Source of the DNA: Isurus oxyrinchus
Lineage: Eukaryota
Assembly (NCBI GenBank): GCA_026770705.1
Contig: JANJGN010000052.1
Coordinates: forward strand, 2,976,001 to 3,040,000
DNA length: 64,000 bases
Direction of reading: 5' to 3'
Shown: piece by piece, positions 20,410 through 43,574 of the stretch
How the letters are laid out: each line of letters opens with the position of its first letter
Position numbering within the stretch: the stretch's first letter is position 1
Translations under genes and position numbers: made by a program
Notes under the pieces: model-generated
Seen by the model: the letters and a program-made list of their open reading frames with translations, nothing else
Databases searched by the model: none
Told to the model about the DNA's origin: nothing

Positions 20410-20564
20410 TGTCACTTTGATCCAACTTCCTCATTTTGTCTCACAGAGACACATCAACCCTTTCTCATTAAATACACAGAGGGAGCAGCACAGGAAGAGG
20501 TCATTCAGCCCAGGCAGAGCGTGTGGGCAGTTCCTCCCCAGGCGAGCAGTCGGACAGGTCCTGG
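20410..20564 (+). promoter_or_regulatory. Gene B putative promoter / non-coding first exon
   Basis: AACTTCCTC (PU.1/ETS-like), ATTAAATA box, CTGG|gtaagt donor at 20564. Confidence 0.6.
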
Positions 20565-21014
20565 GTAAGTAATGGAACGATTGGAATTCACTTCCACGAC
20601 CAACACAGTCCTTTGTTGATGTTGTGACTTTATAAAGACAAATTCCAATGATTGATGCCTTTGAAAGATTTCTACTGATTATTGAGATCTGGGTGTGAGG
20701 CTCAAGTCTGTTGTACAGAACATCTTTCTAGCTCAAGGGATGAGGGAAGTGCAGGGACATGAGCTTTGGGACATCCTGAGGTGCTGAAATACGATATAGA
20801 AATGCAAGTCCTTCATTGATTTATTTTTTTAAAGCTTTTTAACTCTCTGCAGAGCACCTATCATCCCACAGAGAACCAAATTAGTCTGTGTAGACAATGT
20901 GTAAAAGCAGTTCTGATCTCTCGAGAGCTGTCGGACAAGAGGTGAGGTCTCATTAACTCCTTTCTCTTTCACAGTTTGAGAGTCAGAAGCTAAAGGAATA
21001 TCTGGGAGTGGACA

Positions 21015-21054
21015 ATGATCGGGAAATCCTACTTCCTCCTGTCACTTCTCCAAG
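21015..21054 (+). CDS. Siglec-like gene B, signal-peptide exon
   Basis: ATGATCGGGAAATCCTACTTCCTCCTGTCACTTCTCCAAG|gtaata. Confidence 0.88.
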
Positions 21055-22139
21055 GTAATATCATCGTCAACTTGGACAGACTTATGGCTAATAGTCTTTG
21101 TAAAAGATCATTCTTATTGAGCTGTGATAGGGAACTGATTCAGCAGTGAGCCAGTGTACAAACTCACACCAAGTCCCATTCACCCATCACCCCTGTGCTC
21201 ACTGATATACACTGACTCCCTGTCTGACAGCAGAACTGCAGGACAGCAGAGACCTCAAAGGGTTTCAGGGCTGGAGGAGGTGACAGTGATAGGGAGTGGA
21301 GAGGGAGGATGGAGGGATAAGGAATCAATGAAGAGATTTTGAAAATTGAGTCATTGCTGGACTGGGAGCCAGTGTAGGTCAGCGAGTGACAGGGGAGCGA
21401 TCGGCTGAATAGAGAAGCAGGGATAAAAACTGGGGGATGAAGTCTATCCTGATGCAAGCACTCCGATATCAATGCCCTGAAATTTTTCTCTCTTGCTGAT
21501 TTTCATCAGAATTTCCCATGAAGACAACACAGAAGCTCTTAGATTAGACAGGCAGTTCAGCGTCACACTTCCTGTCCATTCTCACCATGCTAGAAAATTC
21601 GATAAGATAGCAAGATAACTGATAGAGAGAAGGGAGGCAAAGCTGTCTGTATGTAAAACTGTCAAATATTCTGAGTTATCATGATTGTTTCTGATCTGCT
21701 GCAGAGTTTATATTTCATTGAAACTTATCACTTTGCAGCTCAGAGAGAGACCATTGACTCACTGCCTGAAAGGGCGGTGGAAGCAGATTCAACAGGAACT
21801 TTCAGAAGGGGAACTGGATAAATACTTGAAGGGGAAATTTTGCAGGGTTGTGGAGGAAAGAGCAGAGGTGAGAGTGGGAATAATTGGACAGATCTTTCAA
21901 CGGCCCAGCACAGGCTCGATGGGCCAAATGTCTTCCTTCTGTTCCGGATCATTCTACAATCCGATAAATTAAGTCCCTTTTCAATAACTCTCCAGGCTCC
22001 TGCTGCAGGAATGGATCTTTCAGAAGGGCAGGGAGCAAGCGGTTTCTCATATCATGTTCATATTTATTGACAATTACATAAGTGCATGGAACTGTTGAAT
22101 ATTTGAGTCTCTAAAGTGTGGATTTAACCTTCTGGTACA

Positions 22140-40222: not shown

Positions 40223-40304
40223 GAGAAAGACAGCGATGGAGGAGAGAGTTTCAGGGACCAGAGACATTGCATTGACCCCCAGTCCACTCTCTGTGAAACA
40301 CCAG
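40223..40304 (+). CDS. Gene B cytoplasmic exon, tail cassette 2
   Basis: ttgcag|G..CAG|gtacag, intact 82-nt duplicate. Confidence 0.75.
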
Positions 40305-41702
40305 GTACAGGAACTGTTTACACTCACTCCAAAGCTTCAATCTCAGTGTGTAGACAACACATGTCCCAGATTCCCACTGATTTGTACCTGTGGAGTCAGC
40401 AATGGTTCAGTATCTCGCTGTCTCTCTGTTATTACACAGCAACTGGTAAAGGCTGTTGTTTAAAATCCCAGAGGGAAACTTTAAACAACTGTCATAACCT
40501 ATATTTCCCAGTGGAAATTTTGAGATGCATCTTTAAATTCAGGAATAAGACCATCAGTTCTTGAGATGGGTTTATATCAAACTACATGAGACATTTATTA
40601 ATTTACACAAGTTAAACAAATGCACGTGGCTACAAACTAGTATTATCATAACTTTATAACAAATTCCCAAACTAATCTCCTCTAAGATAACCCACAGACT
40701 TTAAGCAGATTCCAAGCGAAGCATTTTCACCTCACAAATTCCAAATGAGGTTCTTTTCACTTTGGTTCCTTTGCAGACAGGTGTAGGCTTACAGCTGCTT
40801 TGATGTTACAAGCCTCTGCTCTGCACACACAAAACTGCTCAAGTTATACGCAATGCTTCTCTTTGAATGTAAATTCTCATTGTATCATCAGGACCTTTGA
40901 ACTCCATCTCTTCTAACAATAAATCCCGTTTCATAGTATCAATTTTATTAGTAATATAAACATTGATTGGTTTAAGAATTCACTCCCAGGCTTTGAATCC
41001 TCCTTTTAAAAATGCAATATGCCTCTTTACCTCTTTGTTTACATCTCAAAGCTACTATACATCAAAGTCCCCAGACCGGCTGTCTTTAATCCAATTAAAA
41101 CACACACACACACACCCACAGACTAAACCTCTGTTTAAAAAGACAATTTCCATTTACAATACATACATGAATAGATTCATAATCCTTCCTCTCTCTTTCT
41201 CCCTCTCTCTCTCTTTCTCATCATGTCTCTGATTACAAGTTTCATGTTATTGAGACTCACACCAGGCACCTGAGTGCAGAATCTAAGCCAGCACTCGCCA
41301 GAGACATTTCAGAGGGATTGCGAGACTGACAGAGGGTCAGTACTGAGAGAGTGCTGCACTGTCTGAGGGTCAGTACTGAGCGAGTGCTGCACTGTCGGAG
41401 GGTCAGTACTGAGGGAGTGCTGCACTGTCGGAGGGTCAGTATTGAGGGAGTGCTGCACTGTCAGAGGGTCTGTGCTGAGGGAGTGCTGCACTGTCGGATG
41501 GTCAGTATTGAGGGAGTGCTGCACTGTCAAAGGGTCAGTACTGAGGGAGTGCTGCATTGCCATAGGTGGTGACTTTTATATGATATGAGAGAAATTTAAA
41601 CCCACTGAGACATGACTGACACTAACGAGGCTGCACAATAATTTAACCCTATCAGTGCCAGTAAATGATGTGAGGATGCCTTCTGTTTCCATTTCTCTGT
41701 AG

Positions 41703-41951
41703 GGTAAACAGAACGTGCTGATTACTGAGCCCCGGAACACAACCAGAGACACAACTAGTGAGGGGGAGACCCCAGCTCCCCGGGGTCTCTCTGAAGGTCC
41801 AGTGGGAGGCGATGCTGGACATGGAATCCCTGACAATCCCAACGACCTTCTCTACGCCAATACCGAAGTCTTCAGGGTGCCCAGTGGTGATGGGTCTGTC
41901 CACAGGGAAGAGGAGACGGAATACGCACAGATCAGATTCAAGCGAAACTGA
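41703..41951 (+). CDS. Gene B terminal exon, tail cassette 2 (LLYANT + TEYAQI)
   Basis: Intact acceptor and 249-nt ORF; AATAAA at 42553-42558. Confidence 0.78.
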   Translation, partial: GKQNVLITEPRNTTRDTTSEGETPAPRGLSEGPVGGDAGHGIPDNPNDLLYANTEVFRVPSGDGSVHREEETEYAQIRFKRN

Positions 41952-43574
41952 GTGTGAAACGGGGAGAGGGGGTGAGGATGTTTGTGGGTGGGGGCAGGGC
42001 TTAAGATTCCATGGAACACGAGACAACCCACTGGGGGACAGGGGGAGAGAGGGAGGAAGGGACTGAATGGATCTGTGGTTGGTGTGGTTTGGAATGAAAT
42101 GTTTCCCCAGTGACGACTTGATGCTGAGTCATTGGGGACAGAGATTCAGTGTCACTCTCTCTCCTTCTCTGTCTCTCTATCTCTCTCCCCTTCTCTGTCT
42201 CTCTCTCTCTCTGTCTCTCTATCTCTCTTTCCTTCTCTGTCTGTCCCTCTCTCTCTATCTCTCTATCTCTCTCCCTCTGCTTCTCTATCTCTCTCTCTCT
42301 CTCTCTTCCTTTAACATGGTCCTTATTAACTGCCTTTGTTAACTCAGCTTTTTGTCACCTGTCCCTAATATCTCATTATGTGTCTCAGAGATGGATTTAT
42401 ATGTGGTTAACAATCCCCTGAAGAGCTTTGGGATAGTTTGCTACATTATGGGTGCTATATAAATGCAAGTTGTAGTAGTAATATTGATCTGCCTCGATTC
42501 AGAATGGAAACACGGAGGCTCCTGCGACAGGGCGTGTGTGCAACAGGCTCGCAATAAATGCATTGCACAGCAACAACTAAGCATGTCCTTTGATACTGAT
42601 GCATCCCAGTCTTGCTGTGTGGACACATCACAACCGAGGGACTGCCTGACTGCGTGCAGCCAACATGGCCGAATAGTCATTAGCAGAAATGTGACGTCAC
42701 TGAACCTTGTTAACATTTCAGAAAGTGCTTTCTGAATTCTGCAACTTGTTTATTCTGTGATAGATTACAAGAAGCCTTTGCATTTTCTATAATATTACAT
42801 TTATTGTCACAAGGGATTGAAATGCCCAGATAACTCTGTACAGATATATTTTTATTAAACATCTTACTCTAGGACAACCTTCCTGCTCCAATCTGTTATT
42901 TCATATCATTGCATTTCCCCACCAAATTATCAAAAATTCCTGTGTCCACATTTATCATGAAAATTTCCCATGTAAACATGTCACACTGTACTTACACTCT
43001 CTTGCCAGTGGTGGTGCTGTAGGTGCACCAAATTCTTTCTCAGAGGCTGCAGGACATCTCCCAGTTGTCTTTACAATATTATTAAGATACAGGAAATGGG
43101 GACAATCTTCACCCTGTGGTTACGATATTGTTAAGACAGAGAGCTGGTGAAACCTCCCCCCCTCCACAGAGTTAAGGGCAGGGTCAGTTCTGGCTGTGAG
43201 ACCTCCACACTCATTCCACGCCCCCTGTTCATTTCCCCATCCCTGCTCTAACTTAGCGCTTTTACACATGAAGTGCGGGACCGACAGGAAAGTGTGGAAG
43301 GGCTGCCCATCGCAGCTGGAACAAGGATCCTGGCGGATCTCCCAGGAAAGAATGGCGGAGTGGGGGAGGGGGAGCAGTGGGGTCAATATCCACACCCTCC
43401 CCAACACCCCTATCACTGTCACTACCAAGAGGGAATATCAGTCTCGAGACAGAGGCCAGAGTGTGAGCAAATGAGACAAACAGAGACTGAAACCAGCACC
43501 AACCAGTGTCCCAGCAAATCAGAGTAGGGGAAATGGGGAAAAGACAGAAAGGTTCTTAATCTGAATGCACGCAA

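What the first reader, a model, noticed from the sequence alone, without database searches (positions are those of the whole stretch)
20410..42560. A single Siglec-like gene with duplicated cassettes at both ends: two ligand-binding V exons and two signalling tails
Seen: gene B has one leader exon and one visible TM exon, but two intact V-set exons (both phase 1-1, both starting with the VGL(S/T)Q end of the signal peptide) and two intact two-exon cytoplasmic cassettes. I see no second leader between the V exons and no TM exon between the tails. Inference: splicing could give V1, V2 or V1+V2 ectodomains combined with tail 1 or tail 2, i.e. combinatorial receptor diversity from one locus. I do not know of this in mammalian Siglecs.
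Basis: partly seen in the sequence, partly recalled or inferred. Interest (0 to 1): 0.85.

Follow-up and report, generated by a model that had tools for sequence, protein, structure and literature searches.

The report
Shark Siglec gene, doubled head and tail
A shark immune-receptor gene of the Siglec family really has two sugar-binding-domain exons and two signalling-tail modules, but related sharks suggest these are mostly joined in series rather than swapped, a layout that automatic annotation already records in other sharks.

Summary
Gene B has one leader, two intact phase 1-1 V-set exons (28785-29159, 32544-32909), one C2 exon, one TM exon and two intact two-exon tail cassettes in a 2.95-kb tandem duplication. 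No second leader or TM exon is present.

The duplicates are old and are not assembly artefacts. V1 falls in a well-supported clade of first-position V domains from great white and basking sharks. The great white model closest to gene B (P0158) reads partial V1-V2-C2-TM-tail1-tail2 as one protein.

The combinatorial reading is only partly supported. Relatives' models join both V domains and both tails in series. In this window tail 1 keeps that GT and has no canonical poly(A) signal. Tail 2 has lost the GT and has AATAAA.

Public RNA contigs show leader>V1-like and V2>C2 splices. No listed joint leaves V1.

The N gaps lie in the C2-TM intron, so hidden exons cannot be excluded.

The same scan already found multi-V and multi-tail Siglec genes elsewhere in this genome. 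I rate it a new variant of a known kind, of moderate interest.

The parts
20976..21054 (+). Leader exon of gene B (ATG at 21015; encodes MIGKSYFLLSLLQ; ends in phase 1). An upstream 5'UTR-like exon ends at about 20564.
   Evidence: The same leader peptide occurs at 45904 (gene C) and at 9702-9664 on the minus strand (gene A). The leader region 20403-22054 is 85% identical to 45292-46889.
28785..29159 (+). V1 exon: V-set Ig domain, 375 nt, phase 1-1. The essential Siglec arginine is replaced by Ser (YLFSLE).
   Evidence: Pfam V-set 2e-13, Ig_CD22 3e-10; clade of first-position V domains, support 98/92; perfect 191-nt contig in run X1 and a leader-like overhang at 28783.
29380..30079 (+). Reverse-transcriptase-bearing retroelement fragment inside the V1-V2 intron.
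   Evidence: RVT_1, 1.3e-07. The region has no counterpart in gene C.
32544..32909 (+). V2 exon: V-set Ig domain, 366 nt, phase 1-1. The essential arginine is kept (YYFRIE). It carries an extra BC-loop Cys (YPSC) and an extra N-terminal Cys (WKCY).
   Evidence: (best solved matches are sialoadhesin, Siglec-5, MAG, Siglec-8 and CD33; Arg aligned with the FRFE arginine of sialoadhesin). The V2>C2 joint was seen in run X6.
33638..33934 (+). C2-set exon, 297 nt, phase 1-1.
   Evidence: C2-set_2, 4e-09. It is 99% identical in nucleotides to the C2 exon of gene C.
34099..34547 (.). Two assembly gaps (34099-34281 and 34313-34547) with a 31-nt CA-rich island between them, inside the C2-TM intron.
   Evidence: The left flank is colinear with gene C up to 51075. 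That point lies just before gene C's degenerate stalk exon, CA microsatellite and stalk-exon array.
36204..36300 (+). Transmembrane exon, 97 nt, phase 1 in and phase 2 out.
   Evidence: It is 100% identical in protein to the TM region of Carcharodon P0160/P0171 and Cetorhinus P0183.
36660..42565 (+). Tandem duplication of the tail module. Unit 1 is 36660-39612 and unit 2 is 39613-42565. Each unit runs from mid-intron to just past the poly(A)-signal position.
37273..37354 (+). Tail 1, exon 1 (82 nt, phase 2 in, phase 0 out).
38819..39067 (+). Tail 1, exon 2. It holds LLYANPQV and TEYAQI. A candidate internal donor CAG|GTTCGA follows 39051 (phase 2), and the TGA is at 39065-39067.
   Evidence: The junction ...TEYAQIR|(R/K)KTA... 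occurs in P0158, P0171, P0174 and P0176.
39598..39603 (+). AGTAAA at the position homologous to the AATAAA of tail 2. No AATAAA or ATTAAA lies between the tail-1 stop and tail-2 exon 1.
40223..40304 (+). Tail 2, exon 1.
41703..41951 (+). Tail 2, exon 2. It holds LLYANTEV and TEYAQI. At the internal-donor position it reads CAG|AT (no GT), and it ends FKRN-stop.
42553..42558 (+). Canonical AATAAA after tail 2.

Best explanation
Gene B is a lamniform-shark inhibitory-type Siglec of the CD33/Siglec-12-like kind. Its exons are phase-symmetric modules.

Its main product most likely carries both V domains in tandem: leader-V1-V2-C2-TM. V1 is an old, fast-evolving, membrane-distal head that in this gene has lost the sialic-acid arginine. 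V2 keeps the arginine.

The two cytoplasmic cassettes are most likely read in series. Tail-1 exon 2 would be spliced at an internal GT donor after 39051. That donor is in phase 2, the same phase as the TM exon's donor, and would join to tail-2 exon 1. This bypasses the tail-1 stop and gives a tail with two YAN(P/T)xV motifs and two TEYAQI motifs, ending at the AATAAA behind tail 2.

Shown here: exon anatomy, phases, age of the duplicates, loss of the poly(A) signal and retention of the GT, and two splice junctions.

Inferred: joint inclusion of V1 and V2 in this gene's mRNA, use of the internal donor, a V1-V2 disulfide, and the signalling consequences.
For: - Anatomy and phases are all compatible with this reading.
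- In the V-domain tree V1 sits in a supported clade (98/92) with the first-of-two V domains of Carcharodon P0160 and P0167 and Cetorhinus P0007. V2 sits beside domain 2 of Carcharodon P0158, at 93% amino-acid identity.
- P0158 reads partial V1-V2-C2-TM-tail1-tail2. Tail 1 and tail 2 of the window pair off with tail 1 and tail 2 of P0158 (shared GTSD/QVLRV against GTRD/VFRV). The tail duplication therefore predates the species split, and both copies stayed intact.
- Many elasmobranch models have 2-4 tandem V domains.
- The BC-loop Cys occurs in 26 of 36 later-position V domains, against 1 of 94 single and 1 of 23 first-position domains. Both exceptions are 5'-truncated models.
- Four models from two species read two tails in series with the same junction, YAQIR|(R/K)KT.
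- Tail 1 keeps GT at that place and matches the donor consensus at 6 of 9 positions, as well as the obligatory donor of tail exon 1. Tail 2 has AT there.
- There is no AATAAA or ATTAAA after tail 1, and there is an AATAAA after tail 2.
- The codons after the internal donor read FEHN in tail 1 but FKRN in tail 2, as in many of the relatives' tails.
- RNA contigs show a leader-like sequence joined to the V1 start (X1) and a V2>C2 GT..AG joint (X6).
Against: - No contig joint V1>V2 or V1>C2 appeared among the rows listed, so co-inclusion of V1 and V2 in this gene is not shown.
- The leader in the X1 contig differs at 2-3 of 28 bases from all three leaders in the window. It may come from a paralogue or another individual.
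- In runs X6 and X7, V1 is barely covered while V2 and C2 are covered. This would fit V1 skipping, although contigs cannot rank exons.
- All serial-tail and multi-V evidence comes from NCBI automatic gene models whose RNA support I could not inspect.
- At least one such model pair (P0007 and P0178) shares identical tail exons behind different ectodomains, so the models can be chimeric.
- The GT of the internal donor is simply the codon pair AGG TTC, and it is also present in the single tail of gene C.
- The Cys-by-position association is not significant when relatedness is taken into account: only 4 independent pairs, sign test p about 0.5.
- Tail dN/dS is 0.78 over 109 codons, which is not clear purifying selection.
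Confidence: 0.55

Rival explanations
1. One reading: regulated alternative splicing gives V1-only, V2-only or V1+V2 ectodomains, combined with tail 1 or tail 2. One locus would then yield a combinatorial receptor set.
For: - Both V exons are phase 1-1 and both begin with the signal-peptide end VGL(S/T)Q, so leader>V2 and V1>C2 are in frame and would give a cleavable signal.
- TM>tail-2 exon 1 is in frame.
- Low V1 coverage beside good V2/C2 coverage in runs X6 and X7 could reflect V1 skipping.
- From my own knowledge, exon-skipping isoforms that lack the V domain are known for CD33.
Against: - In the proteins collected, no complete model (one with a leader) places a Cys-bearing V2-type domain directly after the leader.
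- Tail 1 has no canonical poly(A) signal.
- Relatives' models join the tails in series.
- No alternative joint was seen among the rows listed.
Confidence: 0.2
2. One member of each pair is an unused relic. V1, which has lost its arginine, or one tail cassette would be skipped or never processed into mature mRNA. The gene would then behave as an ordinary one-V, one-tail Siglec like gene C.
For: - V1 lacks the essential Arg.
- V1 against V2 gives dN/dS 1.5 and tail 1 against tail 2 gives 0.78, neither of which shows clear constraint.
- Tail 1 has lost its poly(A) signal.
- V1 coverage is weak in organism-B runs.
Against: - V1 is intact with good splice sites (8 of 9 donor match).
- V1 belongs to a clade kept open in at least three lamniform species, always at position 1.
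- A spliced leader>V1-like contig and a perfect V1 contig exist in run X1.
- Both tails have stayed intact since before the split from Carcharodon.
Confidence: 0.15
3. Two genes joined by the assembly. The leader, V1, V2 and C2 exons would belong to one gene, and the TM and tail exons beyond the N gaps to another.
For: The gaps (34099-34547) lie between the C2 and TM exons and their true length is unknown. In gene C this interval holds about 8 kb of stalk exons.
Against: - Exon order and flanks are colinear with gene C on both sides of the gap.
- C2 ends in phase 1 and TM starts in phase 1.
- The closest great white model splices C2 directly to TM (...LTVQ|GRDSSKW).
- No leader or V exon lies between the gap and the TM exon.
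Confidence: 0.05
4. The duplicates are haplotype or assembly artefacts.
For: None beyond the presence of gaps in the region.
Against: - V1 and V2 differ by 16% and belong to different old clades.
- The tail units differ by 5-19% depending on the segment.
- The closest Carcharodon model (P0158) also holds two tails.
Confidence: 0.02

Closest known systems
Carcharodon carcharias LOC121274079 (P0158, NCBI automatic model), together with Carcharodon P0160/P0167 and Cetorhinus maximus 'Siglec-12' isoforms (P0007, P0163)
   Same: It has the same domain order. P0158 is 93% identical to V2 and 92% to C2, and reads partial V1-V2-C2-TM-tail1-tail2. V1-type domains share the HLVARS.VGIWYMRR loop.
   Different: These are predictions and have not been described in a paper. 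The V1 residue at the arginine position varies: Arg in most, Lys in P0158, Ser in the window. P0158 lacks the leader and the V1 start.
Primate Siglec-12 / human Siglec-XII
   Same: It is an inhibitory Siglec with two V-set domains, and it has lost the essential arginine in one lineage (R122C in humans; PMC6288428).
   Different: It has a single cytoplasmic tail. It arose independently in mammals. Orthology with the shark genes is not implied by the 'Siglec-12' label that automatic annotation gives them.
CD33 and CD33-related Siglecs
   Same: The predicted V-C2 fold of the relative P0167 best matches CD33 (Foldseek E 1e-17, TM 0.77 on the target). The C-x4-C plus E-strand Cys pattern is shared. 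The distal motif TEYAQI resembles the membrane-distal ITIM-like/ITSM motif.
   Different: The proximal motif LLYANP/LLYANT does not fit the consensus [ILVS]xYxx[ILV]. There are two V domains and a repeated tail. Teleost fish are reported to lack CD33-related Siglecs (PMC7226832).
Receptors with alternative cytoplasmic exons, such as the L-MAG and S-MAG isoforms of Siglec-4 (from my own knowledge)
   Same: One ectodomain can be joined to different cytoplasmic ends by splicing.
   Different: Here the two ends are near-identical duplicates. The proximal one has no canonical poly(A) signal and can be spliced onward in frame.
Other multi-cassette Siglec genes in this same genome, noted earlier by this scan (four tail cassettes; seven V exons)
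   Same: They show the same modular repetition of V exons or tail cassettes. Earlier follow-ups also concluded that the tails are strung in series, judging from relatives' models.
   Different: This gene combines a doubled head and a doubled tail. Those notes are unchecked AI notes and I do not count them as independent evidence.

Membership tests
Siglec family | N-terminal V-set Ig domain most similar to Siglec V domains | tested here: met
   Pfam V-set and Ig_CD22 match V1, V2 and the V exon of gene C. The best solved-structure sequence matches of V2 are sialoadhesin, Siglec-5, MAG, Siglec-8 and CD33, at E about 1e-14. The fold of the relative P0167 best matches CD33, MAG and Siglec-10.
Siglec family | Essential arginine on the F strand (sialic-acid carboxylate contact) | tested here: met
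   V2 has YYFRIE, with its R aligned to the FRFE arginine of sialoadhesin. V1 has Ser at this column, so the feature is not met for V1.
Siglec family | Three-cysteine pattern of the V domain (a B-E intrasheet pair plus an extra B-strand Cys for an inter-domain bond) | tested here: met
   The pattern C-x4-C plus GDC is present in V1, V2 and all but one of the 153 related V domains (one single-V domain has Ser at the first B-strand Cys). This is the sequence pattern only; the bonds themselves were not tested.
Siglec family | Binding of sialylated glycans | not testable with these tools
   This needs recombinant V1, V2 and V1V2 tested on glycan arrays.
Inhibitory CD33-related Siglecs | Membrane-proximal ITIM [ILVS]xYxx[ILV] plus a distal ITIM-like/ITSM motif | tested here: inconclusive
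   The distal TEYAQI fits in both tails. The proximal LLYANP (tail 1) and LLYANT (tail 2) do not fit, whereas gene C has LFYANI. The YANPQV form is conserved in many paralogues and so is not simply broken.
Two-V Siglecs (Siglec-12 type architecture) | Two V-set domains in tandem in one polypeptide | tested here: inconclusive
   At the DNA level there are two in-frame V exons behind one leader. Relatives' models carry them in tandem. RNA contigs show leader>V1-like and V2>C2 joints but no V1>V2 joint among the rows listed.
Alternative-terminal-exon receptors (mutually exclusive tails) | Each alternative tail ends in its own polyadenylation signal | tested here: not met
   No AATAAA or ATTAAA lies between the tail-1 stop and tail-2 exon 1; only AGTAAA at 39598. 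An AATAAA at 42553 follows tail 2.

The most novel reading that the evidence does not exclude
Both layers operate together. The phase-symmetric head and tail cassettes would be strung in series and also differentially included. One locus would then produce a graded set of receptors (V1V2 or V2 heads; one or two tail units) that differ in ligand reach and in the number of phosphotyrosine docking sites. Copy number of heads (2-7) and tails (2-4) across this shark's Siglec cluster would be a general tuning mechanism.
Probability: 0.2. Interest if true: 0.65.

Novelty: new variant of a known kind. Interest (0 to 1): 0.45.

Why it matters
Inhibitory CD33-type Siglecs are usually presented as a mammalian expansion, and bony fish are reported to lack them (PMC7226832).

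This gene shows that sharks have such receptors and build them from repeatable modules. The ligand-binding head is doubled, with the outer head having lost the sialic-acid arginine, as in human Siglec-XII. The signalling tail can be lengthened in frame by an internal splice donor.

If serial use is confirmed, it gives a simple genomic mechanism for tuning receptor reach and inhibitory strength. It would also be an independent parallel to primate Siglec-12.

The value of this single locus is limited. Automatic annotation already predicts the layout in related sharks, and this scan has met it elsewhere in the same genome.

Tried and rejected
- **Locus look-up closed.** The relatives' junctions are therefore known only from protein models.
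- **No transcript-derived proteins.** Searching the V1 exon in the 5.8-billion protein set gave three NCBI shark proteins at 64-75% identity. None came from this gene's transcripts. The searches with P0007 and P0176 returned only genome-annotation entries (NCBI/UniRef/nr, nearly all automatic models) and no Logan or other transcript-assembly source.
- **Reads call.** It showed no V1>V2 or V1>C2 joint among the rows listed. The contigs are short and break at exon ends shared by paralogues, so this absence is not evidence.
- **Independent contrasts.** The independent-pairs test of 'BC-loop Cys against later position' had only 4 usable pairs and was not significant. Only the raw association (Fisher p 5e-19) stands.
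- **Structure prediction.** Prediction of the relative P0167 gave three folded Ig domains (mean pLDDT 77.6) but returned no coordinates. The V1 Cys to V2 Cys distance could not be measured.
- **Haplotype artefact and two-gene readings.** Both were rejected on divergence, colinearity and the closest Carcharodon model.
- **Joined model.** Exons were searched one by one, by reference. The in-frame codons of tail exons 1 and 2 were pooled only inside a local script for dN/dS.
- The N gaps were not filled.

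
Full report
**What is in the window**

The window is vertebrate DNA from a shark. It holds three paralogous Siglec-type genes.
- Gene A lies on the minus strand: leader 9702-9664, V exon 8125-7760, C2 exon 6898-6605.
- Gene B, the finding, lies on the plus strand at 20.4-42.6 kb.
- Gene C lies on the plus strand at 45.3-61.9 kb.

The closest database proteins come from the lamniform sharks Carcharodon carcharias and Cetorhinus maximus. None is identical to the window; the best is P0158, at 93% over V2. 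The window is therefore from another lamniform individual or species, or from a paralogue not represented in the database.

**The observation**

- Leader: ATG at 21015, exon ends 21054, phase 1.
- V1: 28785-29159, 375 nt.
- V2: 32544-32909, 366 nt.
- C2: 33638-33934, 297 nt. V1, V2 and C2 are all phase 1-1.
- TM: 36204-36300, phase 1 in, phase 2 out.
- Tail 1: exon 1 at 37273-37354, exon 2 at 38819-39067.
- Tail 2: exon 1 at 40223-40304, exon 2 at 41703-41951.

A tblastn of the window with each exon's peptide finds no further leader, V, C2, stalk or TM exon in gene B. Self-BLAST shows V1 and V2 at about 85% identity over roughly 490 bp. It also shows a head-to-tail duplication, 36660-39613 against 39612-42565.

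**The assembly gaps**

The two N runs (34099-34281 and 34313-34547) lie in the intron between the C2 and TM exons. They therefore interrupt no visible exon and no reading frame. C2 ends in phase 1 and TM begins in phase 1.

Both flanks are colinear with gene C: 33387-34084 matches 50378-51075, and 35670-36463 matches 59441-60202. The closest great white model joins C2 directly to TM.

In gene C, however, the corresponding interval begins with a degenerate stalk exon (51135-51236) and a CA microsatellite. It then holds seven roughly 1-kb repeats, each with an I-set exon. The 31-nt island between the two gaps in gene B is CA-rich. One or more stalk exons hidden in the gap cannot be excluded.

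**What the domains are**

V1, V2 and the V exon of gene C match Pfam V-set and Ig_CD22. The next exon matches C2-set_2. Among solved structures V2 is most similar to sialoadhesin, Siglec-5, MAG, Siglec-8 and CD33 (E about 1e-14). Its arginine in YYFRIE aligns with the ligand-binding arginine of sialoadhesin.

V1 has Ser at that column (YLFSLE). A predicted structure of the relative P0167 (leader-V1-V2-C2, mean pLDDT 77.6) gives three Ig domains. Its best fold matches are CD33, MAG and Siglec-10.

**The V duplication is old and positional**

I built a maximum-likelihood tree of 45 V domains. Window V1 sits in a supported clade (98/92) with the first-of-two V domains of Carcharodon P0160 and P0167 and Cetorhinus P0007. 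These share the same enlarged loop (HLVARS.VGIWYMRR). V2 sits beside domain 2 of Carcharodon P0158.

So V1-type and V2-type domains diverged before these species split. V1 against V2 gives dN 0.19 and dS 0.13, a ratio of 1.5. This fits diversification of the head or relaxed constraint.

A search of 1.84 billion representative proteins with V2 found many elasmobranch proteins with 2-4 matched stretches. NCBI names them Siglec-8, -12 or -13. They come from Scyliorhinus, Mustelus, Hypanus, Cetorhinus and others.

Across 153 related V domains, a cysteine in the BC loop (YPSC in V2) occurs as follows:
- 26 of 36 domains that follow another V domain;
- 1 of 94 single V domains;
- 1 of 23 first-position domains.

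The two exceptions are 5'-truncated models without a leader. The extra Cys of the C2 exon also lies a few residues after its B-strand Cys (SCTFNTTC). From my own knowledge of CD33, that extra Cys is the partner for the first B-strand Cys of the V domain.

I infer that V2-type domains are adapted to sit behind another V domain and to take its inter-domain disulfide. This inference has two weaknesses. The association is not significant once relatedness is taken into account (4 independent pairs). No coordinates were available to measure the Cys-Cys distance.

**RNA evidence**

Runs were found with 28700-33960 and four were laid on it.
- Run X1 has a perfect 191-nt contig inside V1.
- X1 also has a contig in which V1's first base follows 28 nt of leader-like sequence, a spliced leader>V1 junction. 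That leader differs at 2-3 bases from all three leaders of the window, so it may belong to a paralogue or another individual.
- Run X6 has two contigs with the joint 32908>33637 (GT..AG), which is V2>C2.
- No joint leaving V1's donor was among the rows listed.
- In X6 and X7, V1 is barely covered while V2 and C2 are covered.

The contigs are short, and the tool states that they show presence, not absence or level. Co-inclusion of V1 and V2 therefore remains unshown for this gene.

**The tails**

The two cassettes are 93% identical in coding sequence, 90-95% in introns and 81% in the 3' flank. Their dN/dS is 0.78 over 109 codons.

Window tail 1 shares GTSD and QVLRV with tail 1 of Carcharodon P0158. 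Window tail 2 shares GTRD and VFRV with tail 2 of P0158. The duplication therefore predates the split from Carcharodon, and both copies stayed open.

Four automatic models join two tail units with the same junction...TEYAQIR|(R/K)KTA...:
- Carcharodon P0158;
- Carcharodon P0171;
- Cetorhinus P0174;
- Cetorhinus P0176.

In the window this junction corresponds to CAG|GTTCGA after 39051, 13 nt before the TGA. That donor is in phase 2, like the TM exon's donor. Tail-2 exon 1 can therefore accept either one. One cassette (82 + 233 nt = 315 nt) is an in-frame insert.

Four further observations fit serial use.
- The internal donor matches the consensus at 6 of 9 positions, as well as the obligatory donor of tail exon 1.
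- Tail 2 has AT instead of GT at that place.
- Tail 1 has no AATAAA or ATTAAA before tail-2 exon 1, only AGTAAA at 39598. Tail 2 is followed by AATAAA at 42553.
- The four codons after the donor read FEHN in tail 1 but FKRN in tail 2, as in many relatives' tails.

Together these fit a transcript that ends behind tail 2 and reads tail 1 as an internal cassette.

There are caveats.
- The GT is just the codon pair AGG TTC.
- It is also present in gene C's single tail.
- I could not inspect RNA support for the models.
- Models in this cluster can be chimeric. P0007 and P0178 share identical tail exons behind different ectodomains.

**Signalling motifs**

Both gene B tails keep the distal TEYAQI motif. 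The proximal motif is LLYANP or LLYANT, which does not fit the ITIM consensus. Gene C has LFYANI.

The YANPQV form recurs in many paralogues of both relatives. It looks like a conserved variant rather than a broken motif. From my own knowledge, YxN is the Grb2 SH2 preference; that is a lead, not a test.

**Comparison with what is known**

Primate Siglec-12 has two V-set domains, and the human form lost the essential arginine (R122C) (PMC6288428). A two-headed Siglec with an arginine-less head is therefore known in mammals.

A paper on teleost fish reports only Siglec-1, CD22, MAG and Siglec-15, and states that fish lack CD33-related Siglecs (PMC7226832). My full-text searches found no paper describing shark multi-V or multi-tail Siglecs.

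Automatic annotation already predicts this architecture in related sharks. Earlier notes of this same scan report four-tail and seven-V Siglec genes elsewhere in this genome. I treat those notes as leads, not as evidence.

**Verdict**

The combinatorial-splicing reading is possible but less likely than serial use of both heads and both tails. I rate it a new variant of a known kind, of moderate interest. The decisive data are junction counts from cDNA, above all 29159>32544 and 39051>40223.

Noticed in passing
window 6605-9702 (minus strand) and 13851-14072: A third paralogue, gene A, lies head-to-head with gene B: leader 9702-9664, one V exon 8125-7760, C2 exon 6898-6605. An inverted copy of gene B's 5'UTR-exon region lies at 13851-14072. 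Its single V clusters with second-position V domains of relatives but has His, not Cys, in the BC loop.
   Followed up: partly
window 1-1890, 4935-6409, 10513-10939, 11728-13849, 19900-20211 (inverted), 38386-38676, 41312-41566, 61028-61491: A 33-bp satellite, which reads as SLSTDPPTVQH-like ORFs, forms kilobase arrays between genes A and B. It also sits inside the intron between tail exons 1 and 2 of all three tail cassettes.
   Followed up: no
window 51135-59127: Gene C has seven near-identical I-set stalk exons at a period of about 1 kb, each followed by a CA microsatellite. It also has a shortened copy at 51135-51236 with intact-looking splice sites, a partial copy at 59061-59126, and an N gap at 53132-53270.
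   Followed up: partly
window 38960-38985, 41846-41870; relatives P0158, P0160, P0171, P0174, P0176, P0183, P0196: The proximal tyrosine motif LLYANPQV(F/L)RVPSGDG is conserved across many paralogues in two other shark species. It looks like a maintained variant, not a decayed ITIM. Both tail flavours share YAN.
   Followed up: partly
window 32567-32569: V2 has an additional cysteine near its N-terminus (WKCY). This is rare at that column in 153 related V domains. It makes the cysteine count of the visible ectodomain exons odd.
   Followed up: no
relatives P0007 and P0178 (Cetorhinus maximus): Two gene models with different ectodomains carry identical tail sequences. Either the TM and tail exons are shared or read through between neighbouring genes, or the automatic models are chimeric. 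Either way, model-based evidence in this cluster needs caution.
   Followed up: no
window 29380-30079, 24659-24979 (minus strand): There is retroelement debris in gene B's introns. An RVT_1 reverse-transcriptase fragment lies between V1 and V2. A CCHC zinc-knuckle-like ORF, which had no Pfam hit, lies in the first intron. The V1-V2 spacer has no counterpart in gene C.
   Followed up: partly
window 61906-61907: Gene C's single tail also keeps GT at the internal-donor position (CAG|GTTCCA).
   Followed up: no
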